This document shows, piece by piece, positions 29,436 through 41,285 of a DNA stretch of 64,000 nt; positions within the stretch are counted from its first letter, which is position 1; every line of letters starts with the position of its first letter. Both the position numbers and the translations under genes were made by a program. The DNA lies in the IMG/VR virus record IMGVR_UViG_3300014494_000005, positions 62,001 to 126,000 of that record, one strand, 5' to 3'. Below the pieces are notes generated by a model that ran no database searches, was not told the DNA's origin, and was given only the letters and a program-made list of their open reading frames with translations.

Positions 29436-32400
29436 TTAAGCATAAAATATTTTATTTTTAATTGGTATTGCTTGCGGAGAATCCATAATATCTTCACCAT
29501 TTATATATAATTCTTCAATTTTTAATGATGTATTTTTAAATAATGTTATTTCTTTTTCATCTTCGCCAAGAGCCAAATCCATATTAGCATATATTGTATT
29601 AGTCCAATCAATATTGTCTTCTTTCACAGATGTTTTTATTATTGCTTTATTATATTTTTTACTATCTCCCCAATGTGCTTCAGCAGCATTTTCTTCCCAA
29701 GACCAATAAATACCTAAATGTTTTCCTTGTGTACCAATATGATAAATCCAATTATCATCAACTGTCATTTCTCTCCAAATATCAATAGTATCATTTGGTT
29801 TTATTTTTTCTTTTATTTTATCTATTACATCATCATATTTATATTTTAATTCCCATATAAACCATTCTTTAAAATCTTCATTTTGTTCAATAACTTCCTT
29901 ATCTTCATCCTCCAAATTATTTTCATATTTATAATATTCAATATATCTTTCATAATTATCACTACGTTTCACATCTTTTATATATTGCGGTGTTATTATA
30001 TTATCTGAAGTTATTGAATCAATTGGTGTTTCATTTAAAACATCATTATCTGTAAGTTTCCATAATAATTTATGTTTTAATTTTTCATTATGGCTAAAAT
30101 CTTCATAATTATTTTGTAAAAATTCTAATACTGATGCTTCATTTGGGTCTGAATATTCTGCTCTTCCTCTTCCACTTTCAGTATTCCATATATCATATTC
30201 TTTAGCAAAGAAATTAATATCAACTATTTTATTGTTTACAACATATTTACCATCACCAACTTCATGATATTCTTCAGTAAGATTAATAGGCATACTACCA
30301 TATTTAATAAGACCATAATATTCTAAATAAAAATCATATTGTGGATTTTTTCTTTTTGTTGCACGTAATATTTCAATTGATGTTTCTTTTTGGTCTTCAC
30401 CTCTTTGAATAAATTCTTCACCCGAATCACTCAATCCAAAATTATTAGAATCACTTACTCTTTGTAATACTTGATAATTGAAATTATTATATACATATTC
30501 GGTAATTCCTAATATATCTGCCATATCTGCATGATTAAAAGCACCATCAGATTGTGCAACAAATAAGTTTCCATCACTATCAGCAATTGCTCTAACATTT
30601 TTATCAAAATTAGTTAACGATTTTGGATTCTTAAAAAATAAATCACCCTCTTCACTAATTGCATATGGTTTTTCTTTATTTTTTTCTATACCACCCATTG
30701 CTTTAACATCCATTGCAGTATTTGAATCAGGAACATTAAAAGTTTTTTCTGCATATTTATCTGCAACACCTTCTTGTTTTATTGATTTATTTTTTTGACT
30801 TGTCAAATTTAATAAATCATCTCGATTATTCCTAACATTATTTGAATATACCTTTAACAATAATGATTTTAACATATCACCAATCTCTTTACCTTTTAAT
30901 CCAAATTGAATTAAATCATTGCCATTAATTGCTAGTTCACCAACTGCTTTTGGATATTTGCCTTGTAATAATTCTTGTGCTGCGGTTTCAATTACACTAG
31001 GTATTATTTGGCTTTGAAGTGATTGTGGTGATGTTACATACATATTATGCACAACTGTTCGTGCTTCAATTAAATTAGTTGCTTCACCACTATCAAATGC
31101 CATTTCAAGTGCTTTAATTTCCTTATAAGTATCAATATCACCCTTTAAATTATTTTTATAAAATTCTGCAGGATTTGGTAATAATCGTATTAATAAATAA
31201 ATAAACTCACCTATTGTTTTAACTTCTTCAAATGGACTTCTATCAATTGTTGATTGTTTTAAATCAAAATTAAAAATTTGTTGAAATAAACCAGTGTCTT
31301 TAAGTAGTTGTATACCAATACGTTTGTCACCTTTTTTTAAAATTTTATCGAACTCAATTAATATTCTTTCTGGCGGAATTTCTTTAATACGACTTGCATT
31401 ATCTTTAATCATTTGCATTGTTTGTGGTTCAATTGTAAAATCAAAACGACTTGCAAACCCTATCATTCGCATCATACGTAATGGGTCATCTGAAAATGCC
31501 TGTGGATTTGCAGCAGAAATTTGTTTATTTTTTATATCTTCCAATCCACCGAGTGGGTCAATAAATTTACCTGAATTAATATTAATTGCCATTGCATTCA
31601 GCTTTGCGTCACGTCTCGTCAAATCATCTTCAATTGGAAGATTTTCATCACTCTGAACATCAAAACCATGATAACCACCTTCACCATTTGGTTTTTCTTT
31701 ACGTGGTAACGCTATATCATAATCAGTACCATCTTTATCAATAAATTTTATAACACCAAATGATTTGCCAACAACATCAACTTTACCAAATTTTTGTAAT
31801 TGCGATATTAATAAATCAATTGATGTGTTTCTAACAATTAAATCAATATCTTTATTGGGTTTGTTAAGTACCAAATCTCTCACAACCCCACCAACAGCAT
31901 AAATTTCAGACCCTAAGTCATTTATAAGTGATTGAATAAATGGTTTTTGTTTTAAATTATTTACAAATTCAGTAATTTTATTATTTGGTTGTATATTGTT
32001 TTCGCACATATTCTCTGCAATATTTATTGAATCTAAATCAAAAACTACTTTAGCTGGAAATGATGAAATTCCTAATTCTCGTAATGCATCAAATCTATGA
32101 CCACCTTCTAAAACATATGAACCATCTTCATCAATAACAACAATTAGTGGACTAATTTCTTTATTATATTCAATCTGTTTTGCTAATTTTTTTGTTTTTT
32201 GTTCTTCATCAGGAGAATAATATTTTAAATCTCCCATTTGTGGAAATGAATTGAATGAAACTTCTCTAATTCCATTAAGTATTTCATAATTTGTTAATGA
32301 TGCTTCAATTGAATTCATGTTTGGAACATCATTTCGAATTATTAATCCATTAATATTATTTCCATTTATTATTGGAAATTCATGATTTAATGTTTCATAA

Positions 32401-32498
32401 CTAAAATTTTGTGCATTACTGATAACAGATTCATTAATTTGTTTTCTCATATAATTTTCAAATAATATTATTTCACTATTAATAATGTCTATTAGCAT
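29436..32498 (-). CDS. Polyvalent protein: ParB-like + class II CCA-adding/poly(A) polymerase-family nucleotidyltransferase + two unknown domains + ADP-ribosyltransferase-like domain
   Basis: EGGHRFDAL (ParB); YAVGGVVRDL...KDIDL, DDLTRRDAKLNAMA, FSDDPLRMMR, PERI..EF.K (CCA); IWRE / GIYWSW / EDEKEI (R-S-E ART). Start moved to MLIDII (32498), 13 nt from the motif. Confidence 0.85.
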   Translation of the reverse strand: MLIDIINSEIILFENYMRKQINESVISNAQNFSYETLNHEFPIINGNNINGLIIRNDVPNMNSIEASLTNYEILNGIREVSFNSFPQMGDLKYYSPDEEQKTKKLAKQIEYNKEISPLIVVIDEDGSYVLEGGHRFDALRELGISSFPAKVVFDLDSINIAENMCENNIQPNNKITEFVNNLKQKPFIQSLINDLGSEIYAVGGVVRDLVLNKPNKDIDLIVRNTSIDLLISQLQKFGKVDVVGKSFGVIKFIDKDGTDYDIALPRKEKPNGEGGYHGFDVQSDENLPIEDDLTRRDAKLNAMAININSGKFIDPLGGLEDIKNKQISAANPQAFSDDPLRMMRMIGFASRFDFTIEPQTMQMIKDNASRIKEIPPERILIEFDKILKKGDKRIGIQLLKDTGLFQQIFNFDLKQSTIDRSPFEEVKTIGEFIYLLIRLLPNPAEFYKNNLKGDIDTYKEIKALEMAFDSGEATNLIEARTVVHNMYVTSPQSLQSQIIPSVIETAAQELLQGKYPKAVGELAINGNDLIQFGLKGKEIGDMLKSLLLKVYSNNVRNNRDDLLNLTSQKNKSIKQEGVADKYAEKTFNVPDSNTAMDVKAMGGIEKNKEKPYAISEEGDLFFKNPKSLTNFDKNVRAIADSDGNLFVAQSDGAFNHADMADILGITEYVYNNFNYQVLQRVSDSNNFGLSDSGEEFIQRGEDQKETSIEILRATKRKNPQYDFYLEYYGLIKYGSMPINLTEEYHEVGDGKYVVNNKIVDINFFAKEYDIWNTESGRGRAEYSDPNEASVLEFLQNNYEDFSHNEKLKHKLLWKLTDNDVLNETPIDSITSDNIITPQYIKDVKRSDNYERYIEYYKYENNLEDEDKEVIEQNEDFKEWFIWELKYKYDDVIDKIKEKIKPNDTIDIWREMTVDDNWIYHIGTQGKHLGIYWSWEENAAEAHWGDSKKYNKAIIKTSVKEDNIDWTNTIYANMDLALGEDEKEITLFKNTSLKIEELYINGEDIMDSPQAIPIKNKIFYA

Positions 32499-32510
32499 AA
32501 AAATCTTTAA

Positions 32511-32519
32511 TATAAATAC
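32511..32519 (-). promoter_or_regulatory. Phage GTATTTATA upstream motif (leftward of divergent pair)
   Basis: 13 nt before ATG 32498. Confidence 0.75.
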
Positions 32520-32589
32520 AATAAAAAAAATCAATATTTAAAATTTTAAATAAAATTTTGTCCATCATAATAAAATATTAATTATTGTA

Positions 32590-32598
32590 GTATTTATA
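32590..32598 (+). promoter_or_regulatory. Phage GTATTTATA upstream motif on plus strand (rightward of divergent pair)
   Basis: Reads GTATTTATA on plus, 67 nt before ATG 32665 of the only plus-strand gene. Confidence 0.7.
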
Positions 32599-32664
32599 TA
32601 CATTAGAAGAAGATTTAAATTTTTTCCGTAATTATATGTTCTATTTTTAATAAAAAACAAATGT

Positions 32665-33669
32665 ATGAAAAATTATGATATAAACGAAATTGCAAATTTA
32701 TATTTTATAAAAAAATACTCATTAGAAAAAATAGGAAAACTCATGCACGTACAGCCAAAAAAAATTAGCAATTTATTAAAGATAAATGGATATGTTTTAG
32801 ATAATAGGTCTCATGATGGTAATAGTAGAAGATATTATGTTGATAAAAATTTTTTTAAAAAAATTGATAATAAAAATAAAGCATATGTATTAGGATTAAT
32901 TATTTCAGATGGTTGCATTTATAAAAATGCAATTACATTCACATCTAAAGATATTGAGTTGGTTGAAATCTTAAAGAGAGAACTTAAATCCGAACATAAA
33001 TTAGCAACATATAATGTTTTTGATAAAAGAACAAATAAATATTATTTAAGAAATTCATTATCAATTCCATCTAAAGAAATTATTAATGATTTAAATAATT
33101 TGGGTGTTTTTTCTAAGAAATCCTTTGATTGTCAAATGCCAAATATACCTGAAGAATATTTTTGGCATTTTGTTAGAGGTATTTTTGATGGTGATGGAAC
33201 AATATTTAAAGCAACATCAAATAAGGAAGGATGTTTATATTTTTCAATTATTGGGTCGGAAAATTTATTGACAGAAATAAAAAATAAATTTAATTTAGTG
33301 GGAATATCTAATACAAAAATAATTAATACTGATTATAAATCAAACAATGGACATCTTATTAGAATTAATTACCATTCATTTCATGATGTTAATATATTAA
33401 AAAATAAAATATATTGTGATTCTGAAGACTTAAGGTTATCAAGAAAATATGATTTATTTCAAACACTAAGAGAATATAAAAAAGGTAATTTTGACCACAC
33501 AAAACAATTACGACAAATAAAAATGTATGATTTAAATAATAATTTTATTAAACATTTTAATAATTTTCATGAAGTAAAAAAAGAAACAGGATTATCATAT
33601 AAATCAATTCATAGAGTTGCGATGGGTATTAGAAAAAACACCAAAAAATATATATTTAAATATATTTAA
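32665..33669 (+). mobile_element. Free-standing two-motif LAGLIDADG homing endonuclease with C-terminal NUMOD1-like HTH
   Basis: AYVLGLIISDGCI and FVRGIFDGDGTI; C-terminal IKMYDLNNNFIKHF.N..E....G...I; only plus-strand gene. Confidence 0.85.
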
Positions 33670-36600
33670 TTTATTTTTTTCTTGTGTTCTCTTGCATAAT
33701 TATTTACAAACTTATTATATATATTTTCACTTATTTTATGATTCATACCGCTTTTTACTTTTTTTCTAAATTCTACTTCTGCTTTATTGGCAATTTCATG
33801 TGCACCATCTTTGCCACTATCGTCATTACTATACTTTAAGCCATAATATTTCATTAAATGTCTTTCTAGCGTTTCATGTAAAAGTATTGCACCTAAATCA
33901 TCAGGTTTAATTAAAAATACATCATCAATCCAAATTTCGTCTTCAGGAATATATTTAGCATATTTTTGCTCTTTCTTTGGTAAATCCAAATCAACGTAAT
34001 GATGTCCACCGTCAACATATTCATCGAACGAATTTTTTCTCACATGGTCACCATTAATTGCATATACTTTATAGTCATCTTCTTGAAATAAGAACAATTT
34101 ATCTAATCCATGTATTTTATTGTCTTTTTCAATTTGCTTTTCAAAATCCTTAAATGATTGTTCATTAAGATTATTATTTTTCATTAAAACTAAATAACCA
34201 CCATCACCATCTTCAGCAATAATTTCGCCAGTTAAATCAAATTCATCAATATCTGAAAAATCATTTTCATTTGAATATCTTGTAGCATCTTCAAATGTTT
34301 TTGTAACCCAGACAATATTATTAGCAGGATATTTATTCAATTCAGCTAATTTTTCTTCAGGTATATTCATTTCTTCATTACCAAGTTCATCTCTTTCAAA
34401 CCTAACAACATCTCCAGCAGATGTACCTTTTTTTTGTGAAAATAAACTATCTACCCGATATGCTTTACCAATATAATTAACATTTTCATTAATTGTTTTA
34501 ATATCAAGATTATTAATATCACCTTGATTACAAGCTACACTTGTATTTCCCAAACCACCTAATCTACATTTCTTTTTTACTGTAACAGCTTGTGCTCCTT
34601 TCATAAATGATTTTTTTCCAATTTCATCAAGAGCAAATTTATCTTGTGTTGCATCACCTACAACATGATGATATTCTAAATCTTCTTTTACACTTTCTGG
34701 AGTTGTTGGTACGTTATTATCTGTAACTGGAGATGTATCATTATTTTCATATGGTGGAAAATTATCCTGTCCAATACTATTTGGTGTTGAGAATTTTGAA
34801 GTTCCATCTTCAGTTATTTTTATATTTTCTGCACCATTCGGTTGTAAGTAACCATTACTAAATCCCACATCAAAAAATGCAATTACTCCATTTTTTTTAT
34901 ATCCTAAATTAGTATAATTAAAATAATCCAAACTTTCAACTCCATATTGTTTTGCTTCTTCAGCAATTCTTAATATAGAATAAAAAAATTCAGCATCTTC
35001 TGGATTTTTTGACATATATCCATCAATTTTTTTTGTATCTATGTCCCCATATCCATTTATATAATAATCAATAATATCATAAAGTCTGAGATTAAATATT
35101 TTTCCAAAAATAAAATCAATTCTTTCTTTAAGTCTTTTAAATTTTTGTGGGTCTGTTTTTAATTTTTCCAAAACAATTGCATATGTTTTAGAAATATATG
35201 TATTTTTTGAATCGATTGTAAATACATTATATGGTTGTGCTATATATTTTAATGGTTTATTTATAAGTTTTAAATTTTCTGCTGCTTCACTATTATCTGC
35301 AGTTATTTTTAAAATTTTATCATCACCAATATCATAAGCAACACCATATTCACCAGCATCAATAAATTTTGGTTCGTTATATCCTCTTATTTTAGCAATT
35401 TGTTTTGCGATATTATCTGCAATATTTCTATTATATTTTTCATCTAATATTTCTTCGTTTTCAGGTAAAAATATAATATTTGCATCTCCCAAATCAGGTT
35501 CATTAACGCCATAATAATCACCAACATCAAAAAATTTTAAAATACCATCCTCATATCCAAGATTTTTGGGATTACTATAATCATCTGATTTAATATTATA
35601 ACTCAACAGTTCTTTTTTTATTTCAAATAATTCTATTAACCAATCATATGCTTGTTGTCTTTCAATATTAGAAATATTTACTTCAGGTTTTTCTGTAAGT
35701 ATATTTTTTGCCAAATTAACTAAATTATTATAATCAAAACGTTTTTTCATTATAATATAGAAATCAACTGTCGTCATATCATTTGGCATAATAGTATCTA
35801 TTATTTCAACATTTCGAACAAATTGTTGAACTGGTTTGTCAATAATATTACGTTCAATTATTCCAAAAAATGATTTATTTTTTTCAGTATCAACTATTTT
35901 ATATATATTGTAAACAATTGCAATATGTATTGGTTTTACTCTTATTAATTTAGCTGCAGCATCTGCTTCACTAATATCAGTAGTAAGTTTTAAAATCTTT
36001 GTATCTCCAATATCAAATACATGACCACCAGTACTACCTGCCATATATTCTATAGTTTTTATTCCTAATTTTTCTGCAATTGAATTTGCTAATTGAATTG
36101 CATAATTTTTATCAAATACGATGTCTTGAACTTGTGGTACTTCATGTTTAATATCTTCATTTATAACATATTCTTCACTACTAAGTGGTTCTCTATCATA
36201 ATAATTTTGTGAAATAAGATATTTTTGAAGTTCTAATAAATTATTATAAAATTTTTTCTTATCATCAACATGATTTAATGTTTCCTTAAGATTATTTACA
36301 CATTCATGAAAATTATCTACAAGTTGTGGCATATTTTTTATAGGCTTATTTGGATATATGCTTCTTCTTATAATAAATTCTTTAAATTCTTCATTTATTA
36401 CACCATCGCCATCACCTACACCATATGGCATTAATGCCCACATTCCATGTCTTTGGTCTTGTCCAACGTTACCTATATCGGAAAGAATATCATCATTACC
36501 ATTAGCAAAATTATACAATTCATACATGTGATATTTTTGTTTTTTTTGAGGACTATAATGAGTATCATATACTTCATCATTAAGACCATAATCAGTTAAT

Positions 36601-37157
36601 ACAATTGTGGGTTGACCATCATGAAGTACTTCACCATAAGAACTTGGTCTACTTAAATCACCAACATTTATTGAATAATTTGCAACAAAATCAATTAAAT
36701 CAATAACAAATTCATTATTATCTAATTGATTTTTAATATTTTCATCTTGTCCAAATATTGGTCTACCACCTCTATTTTCAGATTCATAGTTTCTTAAATA
36801 ATAAAATAAATCGCTAAGACTTGGAATACCAGTTAATTCTTTGATTCTCTTTTCACCCACCTTTTTTACTTTTTCCGCAATCAACCAACTATCATCATCT
36901 GCATTGTCATAAATAATTGTAACAATATGTTGTGTATCTCTATAATATCCAATATTGGCTTCGGCTTCATTTTGTGCAATACCTTTTTGATTTTTTGCTA
37001 ATTTTAATACTTTCTGACCATCAATATCATAAACAATTCTACCACTACCACTACCAATTCTTGATAGATGTTCATTAGCATATTGTATTCTACTTGCAAA
37101 TGATTTTATGTTAAGAAATTCCGTTAAGAAATTCTGTTTAAATTCATCGTATGTCAT
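33666..37157 (-). CDS. Polyvalent protein: three tandem protein-kinase-like domains + ART-like domain + zincin metallopeptidase
   Basis: Gly loops GSGSGRIVY / AGSTGGHVF / AGEYGVAY; VLKL / ILKL / ILKI; D...N.G and DYG/DVG x3; AYR...WVT..A.RY; LLHETLE...AHEIA. Confidence 0.85.
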   Translation of the reverse strand: MTYDEFKQNFLTEFLNIKSFASRIQYANEHLSRIGSGSGRIVYDIDGQKVLKLAKNQKGIAQNEAEANIGYYRDTQHIVTIIYDNADDDSWLIAEKVKKVGEKRIKELTGIPSLSDLFYYLRNYESENRGGRPIFGQDENIKNQLDNNEFVIDLIDFVANYSINVGDLSRPSSYGEVLHDGQPTIVLTDYGLNDEVYDTHYSPQKKQKYHMYELYNFANGNDDILSDIGNVGQDQRHGMWALMPYGVGDGDGVINEEFKEFIIRRSIYPNKPIKNMPQLVDNFHECVNNLKETLNHVDDKKKFYNNLLELQKYLISQNYYDREPLSSEEYVINEDIKHEVPQVQDIVFDKNYAIQLANSIAEKLGIKTIEYMAGSTGGHVFDIGDTKILKLTTDISEADAAAKLIRVKPIHIAIVYNIYKIVDTEKNKSFFGIIERNIIDKPVQQFVRNVEIIDTIMPNDMTTVDFYIIMKKRFDYNNLVNLAKNILTEKPEVNISNIERQQAYDWLIELFEIKKELLSYNIKSDDYSNPKNLGYEDGILKFFDVGDYYGVNEPDLGDANIIFLPENEEILDEKYNRNIADNIAKQIAKIRGYNEPKFIDAGEYGVAYDIGDDKILKITADNSEAAENLKLINKPLKYIAQPYNVFTIDSKNTYISKTYAIVLEKLKTDPQKFKRLKERIDFIFGKIFNLRLYDIIDYYINGYGDIDTKKIDGYMSKNPEDAEFFYSILRIAEEAKQYGVESLDYFNYTNLGYKKNGVIAFFDVGFSNGYLQPNGAENIKITEDGTSKFSTPNSIGQDNFPPYENNDTSPVTDNNVPTTPESVKEDLEYHHVVGDATQDKFALDEIGKKSFMKGAQAVTVKKKCRLGGLGNTSVACNQGDINNLDIKTINENVNYIGKAYRVDSLFSQKKGTSAGDVVRFERDELGNEEMNIPEEKLAELNKYPANNIVWVTKTFEDATRYSNENDFSDIDEFDLTGEIIAEDGDGGYLVLMKNNNLNEQSFKDFEKQIEKDNKIHGLDKLFLFQEDDYKVYAINGDHVRKNSFDEYVDGGHHYVDLDLPKKEQKYAKYIPEDEIWIDDVFLIKPDDLGAILLHETLERHLMKYYGLKYSNDDSGKDGAHEIANKAEVEFRKKVKSGMNHKISENIYNKFVNNYAREHKKKIN

Positions 37158-37176
37158 TTTTGAATATAAGTATATT

Positions 37177-37185
37177 CATAAATAG
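37177..37185 (-). promoter_or_regulatory. Variant motif (sense CTATTTATG)
   Basis: 20 nt before ATG 37157. Confidence 0.6.
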
Positions 37186-37227
37186 TTAAGTTTTTAATGA
37201 ATTTTATAAAAATAATGAATTTATATG

Positions 37228-39261: not shown

Positions 39262-40044
39262 TTATTTTTCATCTTCATATGACTTAAACACAAGTGTAAT
39301 ATATTCTATTAAATGAGGTACAATATCTAAATATTTCATTTCAGAAACACTATACCAACCATATTTTGTATTTTCATCATTTAATTTAACATCTGTTTCT
39401 TCACCAGTATATCTACAAGCAAATACATGTTCAATACTATCAGTATGTCTTTGAATACTAAATGTTTTTATAAATTTTTTAATTTCTAATTTAGTTTCTT
39501 CAAGAATTTCTCTTTCAATCGCTTGTTGTGGTTTTTCACCCTTTTTAATTTCACCGCCAACTAATGACCATTTATTTGGCATCCAAATTTTACTATCATC
39601 TGCTCTTTTAAGTAATAAAATTTTGTTATTATTATTAACAATTACTGCAACTGCGTTTTTTTTTAATTCTTTCTTTTCTTCATTTAACCTTGGTGTTTGA
39701 TATGGCATTAATTCTGAATTAGGATTTGTTGTCATATCTTGTTTAATTTTTTTTGACCTTTCAATACTTGCACGGTCTTGATTTAATGTTGTTTCAATAA
39801 AATTTTTCATTAAATCACCGCCAGCAAGTGCGTATTGTATTTTATCTCCAGTTTGTGGATTAAAATAATCAAAAAAATTCTTTAATCTTTTTAATGCTTG
39901 ATATGTCAAAACACCGTTTTTAAGTATAAAATTAGCTCGTTTTAGACCATCTGTATCTGAAGTGGATGCTTTTGCTATCTCAATACTTTTAAGTATATTT
40001 TGAGGTATATAATATTGTTTATTTAGTAATTCTTGATTTGCCAT
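39262..40044 (-). CDS. Two-domain protein: N-terminal unknown + Nudix hydrolase
   Basis: Nudix box GGEIKKGEKPQQAIEREILEETKL; ILLLKRA; W.LVGG. Confidence 0.85.
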   Translation of the reverse strand: MANQELLNKQYYIPQNILKSIEIAKASTSDTDGLKRANFILKNGVLTYQALKRLKNFFDYFNPQTGDKIQYALAGGDLMKNFIETTLNQDRASIERSKKIKQDMTTNPNSELMPYQTPRLNEEKKELKKNAVAVIVNNNNKILLLKRADDSKIWMPNKWSLVGGEIKKGEKPQQAIEREILEETKLEIKKFIKTFSIQRHTDSIEHVFACRYTGEETDVKLNDENTKYGWYSVSEMKYLDIVPHLIEYITLVFKSYEDEK

Positions 40045-41285
40045 TATGATGTCATTATATTAACTGTAGATTTATTTATTATTCTTATCATATCTTTAAT
40101 TTTATCACAAGTAATATTAATTTGATTATCAATATCTTTCAAAAATTCTTTTTCATTAATTCTTATAATATGACAATTGTGTTTTTCCTTAAGATAATTT
40201 TCACGTATAATATCTCTTTCTTTACATTTTATTTTATTATGATTAATTTCATCCCATTCAATACATATATTATATTTCTCAATATAACCATCCACCCAAT
40301 ATCTTATAAATTTTTTCTCACCGCCATTTAATGCATGTTGAATTGGTAAACCTAGCTTTTCGGAAATCATATCTAAATAAATTATTGAATTCGCATTATA
40401 TGATGGAACACGTTTTTTCCAAATTTCACCATATCTTTCAATCATAGTATTTACAATTTTTTCTGAAACCAATTTATTTTGTGAGGGATATTCAACACCA
40501 AATCTTTCTAAACTCGTTTTTTTTATTTTATCTTTAATCTCTAAAGAAGAATTTGGATTCTTCACACCATATCTTTTCAAATTTGTTTTATTTGCCTTTT
40601 CTTTAACATTTTTATTCAATAATGAACATTCAACACCATATTTAATTAAATTAGTTCTTTTAATTTTTTCTTTGGTATCAGATGATTGTAAATTATATTC
40701 AACACCAAATTTTTTCAAACATGTTTGTTTTTTCTTTTCTTTAATTTTGGCAGATTGTGAATTATGTTCAACACCAAATTTTAATAAATTGGTTTGTTTT
40801 ATTTTATTTTTAGTATCTTTACACAATAAATTTGTTGTTGTGCCAAATTTTTTCAAACATGTTTGTTTTCTCTTTTCTCTAACTTCTGCTAATTGTGATT
40901 GATGCTCAACACCATGTTTTTCGAAAAATAATTTTTTTCTTTTTTCTTGTACTTCTAGTGATTGTAATGGATTTTCAACGCCATATTTTTTCAAATAACC
41001 TTGTTTTATTCTATTTTTAATATCCTCATCAGAACCTTTACATTTTACTGAACAATGCGTAGTATAACCTCTATTAAATTTTATAAATTTAACTAAATTA
41101 CCACACTTACATTTCGGTAATTCAGATATATTATTTAGATAATTAAATAACATTTGTCCCCAATTTGTTATCTTAAAATTTTTGTTAAATTCTATTATGT
41201 TATTAAGTTCATTAGGAAATTCAGTTCTTATTTGCGAAATTCCTTTATAACCACCATCTAAAAAATTTAAAAAATTATTATTCAT
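40044..41285 (-). CDS. Homing-endonuclease-like protein with KQT.LKKFGV repeats and C-terminal PD-(D/E)XK-like domain
   Basis: About 8 repeats K.KQTCLKKFGV....QS..IK; C-terminal YWVDGYIEKYNICIEWDE..H. Confidence 0.7.
   Translation of the reverse strand: MNNNFLNFLDGGYKGISQIRTEFPNELNNIIEFNKNFKITNWGQMLFNYLNNISELPKCKCGNLVKFIKFNRGYTTHCSVKCKGSDEDIKNRIKQGYLKKYGVENPLQSLEVQEKRKKLFFEKHGVEHQSQLAEVREKRKQTCLKKFGTTTNLLCKDTKNKIKQTNLLKFGVEHNSQSAKIKEKKKQTCLKKFGVEYNLQSSDTKEKIKRTNLIKYGVECSLLNKNVKEKANKTNLKRYGVKNPNSSLEIKDKIKKTSLERFGVEYPSQNKLVSEKIVNTMIERYGEIWKKRVPSYNANSIIYLDMISEKLGLPIQHALNGGEKKFIRYWVDGYIEKYNICIEWDEINHNKIKCKERDIIRENYLKEKHNCHIIRINEKEFLKDIDNQINITCDKIKDMIRIINKSTVNIMTS

What the first reader, a model, noticed from the sequence alone, without database searches (positions are those of the whole stretch)
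33666..37157. Three tandem kinase domains fused to an ART-like domain and a metallopeptidase
Seen: kinase 1 (~36540-37157; GSGSGRIVY, VLKL, GDL..SSYG, LTDYG), kinase 2 (35448-36155; AGSTGGHVF, ILKL, DDYSNPKNLG, FFDVG) and kinase 3 (34818-35438; AGEYGVAY, ILKI, DYFNYTNLG, FFDVG). Kinases 2 and 3 look like a duplication. They are followed by an ART-like unit (34170-34484; AYR, WVT, A.RY) and a zincin (33666-34160; HETLE...AHE). Established: single phage kinases such as T7 gp0.7 subvert host functions. Inference: a triple-kinase array with divergent catalytic loops suggests distinct substrates, either proteins or small molecules such as nucleotides or signals. I know of no described phage protein with this architecture.
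Basis: partly seen in the sequence, partly recalled or inferred. Interest (0 to 1): 0.8.

Follow-up and report, generated by a model that had tools for sequence, protein, structure and literature searches.

The report
Triple-kinase phage polyvalent effector protein
This is one half of a giant multi-enzyme "polyvalent" protein of an uncultured peat/permafrost phage. It carries three stripped-down protein-kinase-like domains in a row, which is real and unusual, while its proposed ADP-ribosyltransferase and metallopeptidase parts remain unproven.

Summary

**Kinases: confirmed.**
- Domains 2 and 3 are a clear duplication (32% identity, E 1e-18).
- A confident AlphaFold model of aa 1-800 matches only protein-kinase-like structures.
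- Domain 1 is a distant paralogue with a changed catalytic loop.
- All three lack the kinase C-lobe.

**ART-like unit (about 100 aa): not shown to be an ADP-ribosyltransferase.** No HMM or profile match exists. The only hints are a non-significant structure hit and language-model neighbours.

**"Zincin": unproven.** It has zincin-like topology, but an invariant HExxE replaces HExxH, and nothing matches it significantly.

**Context changes the picture.**
- More than 180 relatives exist, mostly single ORFs of 1500-2000 aa in large phage contigs.
- They share a kinase head and an almost invariant 40-aa peptide.
- Their tails vary: CCA-adding tRNA nucleotidyltransferase, 2H/Acb1-like phosphoesterase, GNAT, ParB, ART-PolyVal.
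- In this window a homing endonuclease gene (32665-33669, +) splits the protein from its ParB + CCA-enzyme half (29436-32450).

This is a new variant of the polyvalent-protein class described by Iyer et al. 2017, and it is probably a host-takeover and counter-defence effector.

The parts
33666..37157 (-). ORF1, 1163 aa. This is the N-terminal half of the polyvalent protein: three kinase-like domains, a conserved peptide, a 100-aa domain and a metal-binding domain.
36543..37157 (-). D1 kinase-like core (aa 1-205). It has G-loop G35/G37/G39, beta3 K52, alphaC E66, catalytic-loop D167 (with Ser where the canonical Asn would be) and D189-Y-G. The N-terminal 19 aa read MTYDEFKQNFLTEF...
   Evidence: Family invariants. 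SteC and PKC-iota profile hits. AF2 strand/helix order beta1-3, alphaC, beta4-5. 35% identity to stand-alone XacN1 ORF170.
36165..36542 (-). D1 extension (aa 206-331). A disordered stretch (206-251) is followed by a conserved helical bundle.
   Evidence: AF2 pLDDT below 50 for 206-251 and 73-83 for helices 256-316. Conserved in all homologues.
35448..36140 (-). D2 kinase-like domain (aa 340-570). Key residues are G378, K390, E397, S524, D526, N532 and D544-V-G.
34803..35438 (-). D3 kinase-like domain (aa 574-785), a paralogue of D2. Key motifs are ILK(617)I, SEA, D744, N750 and D763-V-G.
34623..34802 (-). Low-complexity, predicted disordered linker (aa 786-845).
   Evidence: pLDDT below 50
34503..34616 (-). 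Hyper-conserved 38-40 aa peptide (aa 848-885), KKSFMKGAQAVTVKKKCRLGGLGNTSVACNQGDINNLD. It marks the junction between the constant kinase head and the variable tail.
   Evidence: At least 90% column identity across 113 copies. Conserved at protein level but not DNA level. Tandemly doubled in some homologues. No Pfam hit. Low pLDDT.
34182..34478 (-). Conserved residues are R900, D916, E921, N927, W950, Y961 and D983.
   Evidence: Alignment A6 of 69 sequences. The domain is widespread both as a stand-alone 95-125-aa phage protein and inside 2000-3500-aa polyvalent proteins. AF2 pLDDT is about 90. No family match.
33669..34172 (-). Metal-binding, zincin-like domain (aa 996-1163). Invariant residues are H1094-E1095-x-x-E1098, A-H1120, N1124 and E1127.
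   Evidence: Alignment A4. AF2 topology is an N-terminal helix, a beta-sheet and two motif-bearing helices. Only non-significant structure hits.
32665..33669 (+). LAGLIDADG/HNH homing endonuclease gene. It converges on ORF1 and overlaps its stop codon, splitting the polyvalent gene.
   Evidence: phrog_4645 at 8e-44 plus an HNH PHROG. PF14528. Absent from the syntenic single-ORF locus L002.
29436..32450 (-). ORF2, the C-terminal half of the polyvalent protein: a ParB-like N domain, a CCA-adding tRNA nucleotidyltransferase and uncharacterised C-terminal regions. The likely start is the ATG at 32450.
   Evidence: PF01743/PF12627/PF13735 and ParB. Collinear with the C-terminal parts of fused homologues such as P0057 and P0005. 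Start region read.

Best explanation
ORF1 is the N-terminal half of a phage 'polyvalent' multi-effector protein.

**Shown**
- It has three C-lobe-less protein-kinase-like domains. D2 and D3 keep a full catalytic set (Gly-loop, beta3-Lys, alphaC-Glu, Asp...Asn catalytic loop, DxG). D1 keeps the ATP-binding and Asp residues but has Ser in place of the loop Asn.
- After the kinases come a flexible linker, a nearly invariant 40-aa peptide, a 100-aa domain of unknown function, and a metal-binding domain of zincin-like topology with HExxE.
- In relatives, the same kinase head and peptide are fused in one ORF to swappable tails: CCA-adding tRNA nucleotidyltransferase, 2H/Acb1-like phosphoesterase, GNAT, ParB-like and ART-PolyVal.
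- In this window a homing-endonuclease insertion at a domain boundary has separated the ParB + CCA-enzyme tail into its own ORF.

**Inferred**
- The protein acts at or soon after infection. The kinase domains use ATP to phosphorylate host proteins, much as T7 gp0.7 does.
- The tail domains repair or protect tRNA 3' ends and, in relatives, destroy cyclic-nucleotide defence signals.
- The three kinase domains probably have different substrates.
- The 40-aa peptide is a protein-level signal of some kind: docking, processing or regulation.
- The HExxE domain is either a variant metallopeptidase that processes the polyprotein or another metal-dependent hydrolase.
For: **Kinase fold**
- The AF2 model has pLDDT 84, and each of the three domains shows the beta1-3/alphaC/beta4-5 order followed by helices and beta7-8.
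- Foldseek against PDB gives 1815 matches. The top 50 are p38, JNK, ULK1, RAF, PRPK, APH(2'') and MTR kinase, at prob 0.96-1.0.
- The D1 profile matches SteC at E 3.6e-4 and the PKC DFG region.
- The named Atlas neighbours of D2 are T7 kinase, Kinase-PolyVal, Pkinase, OspG and APH, with scores up to 0.95.
- XacN1 ORF170 bridges D1 and D2/D3: it is 35% identical to D1 but carries the D2/D3-type loop DYSNIKNWG.

**Catalytic residues under selection**
- They are invariant across 72 D2/D3 copies and 59 D1 copies.

**Polyvalent class**
- Homologues carry PF01743/PF12627, PF13563/PF23474 (Acb1), GNAT, ParB and PF18760 ART-PolyVal in a single ORF.
- The 100-aa domain also lies between ART-PolyVal and PBECR5 in a 3242-aa polyvalent protein.
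- Iyer et al. 2017 describe this class.

**Split gene**
- ORF2 is collinear with the homologues' tails.
- Syntenic locus L002 has one 1971-aa ORF and no endonuclease gene.
Against: - There is no biochemical evidence for any activity.
- No Pfam, NCBIfam or PADLOC-type model matches the kinase domains. Kinase-PolyVal and T7-kinase HMMs give no hit.
- Foldseek E-values are modest (5e-4 at best), and the tool does not say which of the three domains aligned.
- D1 lacks the catalytic-loop Asn and could be a pseudokinase.
- Packaging or injection is not shown. The gene sits between replication genes and baseplate genes, which is not informative.
- Small-molecule kinases (APH, MTR kinase) score as well as protein kinases, so the substrate class is open.
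Confidence: 0.6

Rival explanations
1. The kinase-like domains phosphorylate nucleic-acid ends, nucleotides or other small molecules rather than proteins. On this view they form a tRNA/RNA-repair or signal-destroying machine together with the CCA-adding enzyme and 2H phosphoesterase tails.
For: - The commonest fusion partners act on RNA or nucleotides: CCA-adding enzyme, 2'-5' ligase/2H, Acb1-like, and one tRNA_lig_CPD hit.
- Small-molecule kinases of the same fold (APH(2''), 5-methylthioribose kinase, PsiK) rank among the top structure hits.
- The C-lobe that docks protein substrates is missing.
Against: - The nearest named sequence and embedding neighbours are protein kinases: SteC, T7 kinase, OspG, Pkinase and PglW.
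- To my knowledge, known polynucleotide kinases are P-loop enzymes, not kinase-fold enzymes.
- Many homologues carry no RNA-repair tail.
Confidence: 0.2
2. One or more of the kinase-like domains, most likely D1, are catalytically dead. On this view they serve as ATP-binding scaffolds or virion-associated structural/delivery modules for the variable effector tail.
For: - D1 is the constant module in all relatives.
- D1 lacks the catalytic-loop Asn, having Ser173 in GDLSRPSSYGE.
- Copy number of D2/D3 varies from 0 to 3.
- The constant head + conserved junction peptide + variable tail resembles polymorphic-toxin delivery architecture.
- The N-terminus resembles the T4 internal-protein capsid-targeting sequence.
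Against: - The beta3 Lys, alphaC Glu, catalytic Asp and DxG Asp are invariant in D1, D2 and D3 across all copies. That pattern is what selection for catalysis would give.
- The stand-alone relative in XacN1 has a canonical loop.
Confidence: 0.12
3. One reading: the 100-aa unit is a minimal ADP-ribosyltransferase and the C-terminal domain is an active zincin peptidase, giving five catalytic activities in ORF1.
For: - The best PDB structure hit of the C-terminal model is cholera toxin A1, and M1 aminopeptidases and SprT-like proteins follow.
- Named Atlas neighbours of the 100-aa unit are PARP, Arr-ms and Tox-ART-HYD1.
- The AF2 topology of the last domain fits the zincin core described in PMC5512222.
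- ART and zincin domains are the commonest polyvalent-protein domains.
Against: - All these structure hits are non-significant (E >= 1, prob <= 0.23).
- No ART or peptidase HMM hits any of 69 + 10 family members.
- hhalign against the ART-PolyVal of homologues gives prob 3.6%.
- In P0163 the 100-aa domain sits next to a genuine ART-PolyVal as a separate module.
- There is no conserved ExE/QxE or STS.
- HExxH is invariantly HExxE.
Confidence: 0.15

Closest known systems
Polyvalent proteins of phages and conjugative elements (Iyer, Burroughs, Anand, de Souza, Aravind 2017, PMC5512222), including their 'Kinase-PolyVal' domains (PF18762)
   Same: - It is a large phage protein that strings unrelated enzymatic domains together.
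- The kinase domains have lost the whole C-terminal lobe but keep the ATP-binding and phosphotransfer residues.
- Relatives carry ART-PolyVal, ParB, GNAT and Pol-beta NTase domains from the same domain network.
- Kinase-PolyVal clusters are among the nearest named neighbours of D2.
   Different: - The Pfam Kinase-PolyVal HMM does not hit any of the three domains.
- I did not see one to four tandem kinase copies at the N-terminus in the text read.
- The conserved 40-aa junction peptide, the 100-aa domain and the HExxE domain have no Pfam model.
- The dominant partner is a CCA-adding tRNA nucleotidyltransferase, which that paper's text does not mention (0 occurrences of 'CCA').
Phage T7 gp0.7 protein kinase (PF27024 Phage_T7_kinase)
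   Same: It is a phage-encoded kinase-fold enzyme used for host takeover. T7-kinase clusters are the top named Atlas neighbours of D2, at score 0.95 with 174 shared features.
   Different: There is no HMM match. T7 gp0.7 is a single-kinase protein rather than a tandem array inside a polyvalent protein. The targets here are unknown.
Minimal bacterial effector kinases (Salmonella SteC, PDB 8jbi; Shigella OspG family)
   Same: These are small, atypical kinase domains of about 170-200 aa. SteC is the best PDB sequence match of the D1 profile, at E 3.6e-4 across the G-loop and beta3-Lys region. OspG_kinase is among the D2 neighbours.
   Different: Those are type III effectors acting in eukaryotic cells. 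Similarity is limited to the N-lobe, and there is no evidence of shared targets.
Xanthomonas jumbo phage XacN1 ORF170 (BBA65318.1) and Xoo-sp13 / Alishewanella phage homologues; PHROG 4301 (unknown function)
   Same: This is a true homologue of D1: 35% identity, E 4e-25, and phrog_4301 at E 1.3e-11. It is the only part of ORF1 with relatives in cultured phages.
   Different: It is a stand-alone 215-aa protein with a canonical DYSNIKNWG catalytic loop. It has no D2/D3, junction peptide or effector tail, and it is annotated only as 'predicted ORF'.
Zincin-like metallopeptidases (MPTase-PolyVal, SprT-like, M1/thermolysin-type gluzincins)
   Same: The predicted topology is an N-terminal helix, a small beta-sheet and two helices. 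The first helix carries H-E-x-x-[E] and the second an invariant Glu.
   Different: The second metal-binding His is invariantly Glu (HExxE). An extra invariant His sits at the start of the second helix. There is no significant sequence or structure match.

Membership tests
Protein-kinase-like (PKL) superfamily | N-lobe fold (beta1-beta3, alphaC, beta4-beta5) followed by a catalytic-loop/DFG segment. | tested here: met
   AF2 secondary-structure order is the same in all three domains. Foldseek top hits are all kinase fold at prob about 1.0. The tool does not report which domain aligned.
Protein-kinase-like (PKL) superfamily | Gly-rich loop, beta3 Lys and alphaC Glu. | tested here: met
   D1 has G35/G37/G39, K52 and E66. 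D2 has G378, K390 and E397. D3 has the equivalent AGEYG, ILK(617)I and SEA. These are invariant in the family alignments.
Protein-kinase-like (PKL) superfamily | Catalytic-loop Asp with a downstream Asn, and a DFG-type Asp. | tested here: inconclusive
   D2 (D526...N532, D544-V-G) and D3 (D744...N750, D763-V-G) meet it. D1 has D167 and D189-Y-G but Ser where the Asn aligns.
Protein-kinase-like (PKL) superfamily | ATP-dependent phosphotransfer activity. | not testable with these tools
   Needs biochemistry.
Kinase-PolyVal (PF18762) / Phage_T7_kinase (PF27024) | Match to the family HMM. | tested here: not met
   No Pfam hit for the whole protein or any domain at E up to 10. These families appear only as language-model neighbours.
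Kinase-PolyVal (PF18762) | Loss of the kinase C-terminal subdomain with catalytic residues retained, inside a phage polyvalent protein. | tested here: met
   Domains are about 200-230 aa and end shortly after DxG. The polyvalent context is shown. The feature is described in PMC5512222.
ADP-ribosyltransferase superfamily | Sequence or profile match to an ART family. | tested here: not met
   Pfam scan of 69 members gave nothing. PDB profile searches gave nothing relevant. 94 stand-alone homologues carry no ART Pfam. hhalign against ART-PolyVal gives prob 3.6%.
ADP-ribosyltransferase superfamily | ART fold. | tested here: inconclusive
   AF2 domain pLDDT is about 90. The best PDB hit is cholera toxin A1, but at E 1.1 and prob 0.14. 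Named Atlas neighbours are PARP, Arr-ms and Tox-ART-HYD1 at 0.89-0.91, which counts as a lead only.
ADP-ribosyltransferase superfamily | R-S-E or H-Y-[EDQ] catalytic triad. | tested here: inconclusive
   R900 in strand 1 and D983 in the last hairpin are at least 90% conserved. There is no conserved STS or ExE/QxE.
Zincin metallopeptidases | HExxH motif in the active-site helix. | tested here: not met
   H-E-x-x-E is invariant in 22 family members. His at +6 is not conserved.
Zincin metallopeptidases | Third ligand (Glu) on the following helix, and a core of N-terminal helix + beta-sheet + two helices. | tested here: inconclusive
   E1127 is invariant on the next helix, and the AF2 topology fits. 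Foldseek hits to M1 aminopeptidases and SprT-like proteins are non-significant.
Polyvalent proteins (Iyer et al. 2017) | Several unrelated catalytic domains in one phage- or plasmid-encoded polypeptide, drawn from the shared polyvalent domain network. | tested here: met
   ORF1 has three kinases plus two further globular domains. Homologues add CCA-NTase, 2H/Acb1, GNAT, ParB and ART-PolyVal in a single ORF. The 100-aa domain is also found in proteins carrying LPD22, ART-PolyVal and PBECR5.
Polyvalent proteins (Iyer et al. 2017) | Packaging into the virion and delivery with the DNA. | not testable with these tools
   The only hint is an N-terminus resembling the T4 IPII/IPIII capsid-targeting sequence.

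The most novel reading that the evidence does not exclude
The family is a modular effector-delivery system of large uncultured phages.
- The constant kinase head (one to four minimal kinases) and the almost invariant 40-aa peptide form a conserved 'chassis'.
- The peptide is the processing, docking or regulatory switch. It could be, for example, an autophosphorylation or cleavage site.
- That switch hands over interchangeable counter-defence tails: tRNA CCA repair, Acb1-like signal destruction, GNAT, ART.
- The 100-aa and HExxE domains are two new enzyme families.
- The kinases may act on tRNA or nucleotide substrates rather than proteins.
Probability: 0.15. Interest if true: 0.8.

Novelty: new variant of a known kind. 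Interest (0 to 1): 0.55.

Why it matters
As far as the papers searched here show, the kinase domains of phage polyvalent proteins have only been predicted, not studied by experiment. This family offers:

- three paralogous minimal kinases in one chain, with natural variants carrying one to four copies;
- a stand-alone relative in a cultured Xanthomonas jumbo phage, which is a practical entry point for experiments;
- consistent fusion to tRNA-repair enzymes and Acb1-like enzymes, which links phosphorylation to counter-defence.

It also exposes three conserved modules with no family model: the 40-aa peptide, the 100-aa domain and the HExxE domain. Two of them are widespread outside this protein. 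The phage recurs in peat, permafrost and bioreactor metagenomes from 2018 to 2025.

Tried and rejected
- **Family scans gave nothing.** Pfam, NCBIfam and PHROG scans of the whole protein and of six pieces returned only phrog_4301 (unknown function) for D1.
- **PDB sequence searches gave little.** phmmer found nothing. The Zn profile found nothing. The ART-like profiles found only spurious hits: designed TIM barrels, Fab chains and nesprin.
- **D2/D3 profile against PDB was marginal.** PBP2x scored 0.009, which I judged spurious, and kinases scored 0.2-0.4.
- **First C-terminal alignment (A7) was discarded.** MAFFT stacked the ART-like fragments on the Zn domain. I rebuilt it with bridging sequences after local tests.
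- **The 100-aa unit is not an ART-PolyVal.** hhalign gave prob 3.6%.
- **The junction peptide is not a DNA-level recombination site.** Synonymous changes are as frequent inside it as elsewhere.
- **The junction peptide is not shared by other proteins.** It occurs once per locus. Literature string searches found nothing relevant.
- **N-terminus.** tblastn of the 30-aa N-terminus against phages found no match.
- **Atlas search for the Zn domain** gave only weak leads: Peptidase_M78 12% and LPD23.

Full report
**1. What is there**

Window 33666..37157 (minus strand) is one uninterrupted ORF of 1163 aa. The window is AT-rich, about 25% GC. It is phage DNA:
- nearly all ORFs lie on one strand;
- PHROG hits include baseplate wedge, family-B DNA polymerase, helicase, tail-fibre-like proteins, NUDIX and homing endonucleases.

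The DNA polymerase is only about 26% identical to any cultured phage. Relatives sit on contigs of 130-366 kb, so this is an uncultured large-phage lineage. Identical DNA is held by 14 peat, permafrost and bioreactor metagenome runs from 2018-2025, and part of it by peat metatranscriptomes.

**2. Domain map**

From homologue boundaries and AlphaFold:

| Module | Residues | Note |
|---|---|---|
| D1 | 1-205 | kinase-like core |
| D1 extension | 206-331 | disordered stretch, then a conserved helical bundle |
| D2 | 340-570 | kinase-like |
| D3 | 574-785 | kinase-like |
| Linker | 786-845 | disordered |
| Junction peptide | 848-885 | hyper-conserved |

**3. The three kinase-like domains are real**

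*Relationships between the domains*
- D2 and D3 are 32% identical over 217 aa, E 1e-18.
- D1 is related to them at profile level: hhalign E 6.9e-5. The Gly-loop, beta3 Lys, catalytic Asp and DxG all align.
- A stand-alone relative of D1, ORF170 of Xanthomonas jumbo phage XacN1, is 35% identical to D1 (E 4e-25). It carries the D2/D3-type catalytic loop DYSNIKNWG, so it bridges the two types.

*Fold evidence*
- The D1 family profile hits the Salmonella effector kinase SteC at E 3.6e-4. It also hits the catalytic-loop-to-DFG segment of PKC-iota, which ends at LTDYG.
- The AlphaFold model of aa 1-800, built on 92 sequences, has mean pLDDT 84. All three domains show the same beta1-3/alphaC/beta4-5/helices/beta7-8 order.
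- Foldseek against the PDB gave 1815 matches. The top 50 are protein kinases (p38, JNK, ULK1, RAF, Pho85, PRPK) and small-molecule kinases of the same fold (APH(2''), APH(4), MTR kinase, PsiK), at probability 0.96-1.0. E-values are modest (5e-4 at best), and the tool does not say which domain aligned.
- The named protein-language-model neighbours of D2 are all in the kinase clan: Phage_T7_kinase, Kinase-PolyVal, Pkinase, OspG_kinase, YrbL and APH. Scores reach 0.95.

*Catalytic residues*
- They are invariant across 72 D2/D3 copies (G, K, E, N, D of DxG; S and D of the loop at 90% or more) and across 59 D1 copies (G35, G37, K52, E66, D167, D189).
- D1 has Ser where the loop Asn aligns (GDLSRPSSYGE), so its chemistry may differ.
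- All three domains end soon after DxG, so the kinase C-lobe is missing.
- No curated HMM (Pfam, NCBIfam) recognises any of them.

**4. The 'ART-like' unit is not established as an ART**

It is a well-folded domain of about 100 aa (pLDDT about 90, order beta-alpha-alpha-beta-alpha-beta-beta). Conserved residues are R900, D916, E921, N927, W950, Y961 and D983.

It is widespread. It occurs both as stand-alone 95-125-aa proteins and inside polyvalent proteins of 2000-3500 aa; 547 representatives match the ART+Zn query at E <= 1e-3.

Evidence against an ART assignment:
- none of 69 members hits an ART Pfam family;
- PDB profile searches find nothing relevant;
- hhalign against the genuine ART-PolyVal domains present in homologues P0017, P0048, P0063 and P0163 gives probability 3.6%;
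- in P0163 the domain sits beside an ART-PolyVal as a separate module.

Evidence for it is only at the level of leads:
- the best PDB structure hit is cholera toxin A1, at E 1.1 and prob 0.14;
- named Atlas neighbours are PARP, Arr-ms and Tox-ART-HYD1, at 0.89-0.91.

I put an ART fold at roughly 0.25-0.3.

**5. The 'zincin' is a variant at best**

The family invariants are L-H-E-x-x-E, then A-H, N and E on the next helix, plus a conserved WVDGGHHYVD segment. The canonical second His of HExxH is always Glu.

The AlphaFold topology is an N-terminal helix, a small sheet and two motif-bearing helices. This fits the zincin core as described in PMC5512222.

The supporting matches are all weak:
- structure hits to M1 aminopeptidases (E >= 1.3) and SprT-like proteins (E 1.8) are non-significant;
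- no HMM matches;
- three homologues faintly match the metal-binding helix of DtxR-type repressors, at E 0.015-0.06.

Metal binding is plausible. Peptidase activity is a guess.

**6. Context: a polyvalent protein split by a homing endonuclease**

The word-index search found 182 homologues. Among the best 120, the architectures are:

| Architecture | Count |
|---|---|
| D1-D2-D3 | 58 |
| D1 + one D2-type | 45 |
| D1 + one D3-type | 12 |
| D1 only | 2 |
| Four kinase copies | 1 |

Most are 1300-2000 aa. After the junction peptide they continue into other domains:
- CCA-adding tRNA nucleotidyltransferase (PF01743/PF12627/PF13735);
- 2H phosphoesterase, which also scores as anti-CBASS Acb1 (PF13563/PF23474);
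- GNAT, ParB or ART-PolyVal.

In the window, the next ORF downstream (29436..32450, likely ATG at 32450) encodes ParB-like + CCA-adding enzyme. It is collinear with the tails of the fused homologues. For example, in P0057 the Zn domain ends at 1289 and the NTase segment starts at 1287.

Between the two ORFs lies a LAGLIDADG/HNH homing endonuclease gene on the opposite strand (32665..33669), overlapping ORF1's stop codon. The syntenic locus L002 has the same neighbours: DNA polymerase, NUDIX, three small ORFs, the polyvalent gene, a 218-aa ORF, then a gp25-like gene further on. It has a single 1971-aa ORF and no endonuclease.

So ORF1 is half of a polyvalent gene cut at a domain boundary. This matches the 'polyvalent protein' class of Iyer et al. 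2017. That paper explicitly describes C-lobe-less kinase domains in phage polyvalent proteins, with T7 kinase as the functional precedent.

**7. The junction peptide**

Residues 848-885 (..SFMKGAQAVTVKKKCRLGGLGNTSVACNQGDINNL..) are at least 90% identical per column in 113 copies, although the flanking enzymes are only about 50% identical. Other properties:
- the unit is tandemly doubled in three homologues;
- it occurs only once per locus;
- it is predicted to be poorly ordered;
- it carries as many synonymous changes as the rest of the gene.

Selection is therefore on the peptide, not on the DNA. Its role is unknown. It could be a docking, processing or phospho-regulatory signal between the constant head and the variable tail.

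**8. Mechanism**

*Shown:* the fold and the conserved catalytic residues of three kinase-like domains, the modular head/peptide/tail architecture, and the split.

*Inferred:*
- the protein is an early-acting host-takeover and counter-defence effector;
- the kinases phosphorylate host proteins, following the T7 gp0.7 precedent and the SteC/OspG-like minimal kinases;
- the tails repair tRNA 3' ends and, in relatives, degrade cyclic-nucleotide signals;
- virion packaging is possible but untested. The N-terminus MTYDEFKQNFLTE resembles the T4 IPII/IPIII N-terminal sequence MKTYQEFIAE, followed by an L-x-E. The pattern is otherwise absent from the 64-kb window. That T4 sequence acts as a capsid-targeting sequence by my own recollection, not by any tool result. 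This phage is not T4-like.

**9. Verdict**

The ART and zincin calls are unproven. The architecture belongs to a known class but represents an undescribed family. Novelty: new variant of a known kind. Interest: 0.55.

Noticed in passing
window 34503-34616 (-), aa 848-885 of ORF1: This is an almost invariant 38-40-aa peptide (SYMPGSxxVxVKKKCRLGGLGNTSVACNQGDINNL) at the junction between the kinase head and the variable tail. It is far more conserved than the enzymes around it, at protein level rather than DNA level, and is doubled in tandem in some homologues. It has no family model and no literature match.
   Followed up: partly
window 37119-37157 (-), aa 1-13 of ORF1: The N-terminus MTYDEFKQNFLTE (family consensus MTYxEFKxNFLxEF) resembles the N-termini of T4 internal proteins IPII/IPIII, MKTYQEFIAE, and includes a following L-x-E. 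That sequence is the T4 capsid-targeting sequence by my recollection, not by a tool result. The pattern M-x(0-2)-[TS]-[YF]-x-[ED]-F occurs nowhere else in the window. This could hint at virion packaging or be chance.
   Followed up: partly
window 32665-33669 (+) and 40044-41285 (-): There are two homing-endonuclease genes. The first (LAGLIDADG + HNH) splits the polyvalent gene. The second (DUF7487/REase-like, PHROG 'homing endonuclease') lies between the NUDIX gene and the 212-aa ORF that follows the DNA polymerase gene. Neither has a counterpart in the syntenic locus L002.
   Followed up: partly
homologues P0017 and P0063 (full length): The 2H phosphoesterase tail of relatives also scores as anti-CBASS Acb1 (PF23474, E 4e-5). 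This suggests that some members of the family destroy cyclic-nucleotide defence signals.
   Followed up: no
L004:2914-3561 (Xanthomonas phage XacN1 ORF170, BBA65318.1): This is a stand-alone 215-aa homologue of D1 in a cultured jumbo phage, annotated only as 'predicted ORF'. It has a canonical kinase catalytic loop, DYSNIKNWG, and a weak hit to the BREX kinase PglW (E 7e-4). It would be a tractable experimental model.
   Followed up: partly
window 34182-34478 (-) and hits P0139-P0336: The 100-aa domain is a widespread family with no Pfam or NCBIfam model. 94 stand-alone proteins of 76-207 aa (most 95-125 aa) were found, and it also occurs in giant polyvalent proteins of up to 3525 aa.
   Followed up: partly
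window 32000-34400: Identical sequence is held by 14 DNA runs from peat, permafrost and bioreactor metagenomes (2018-2025). Between 15% and 48% of its sampled words are held by six peat metatranscriptome runs. The phage is therefore recurrent in these habitats and possibly transcribed.
   Followed up: no
window 37158-37200 and 32451-32480 (-): There is no Shine-Dalgarno-like purine run upstream of the ATG of ORF1 or of the likely ATG of ORF2; the leaders are simply AT-rich. This fits hosts that do not rely on SD pairing, but the host was not determined.
   Followed up: no
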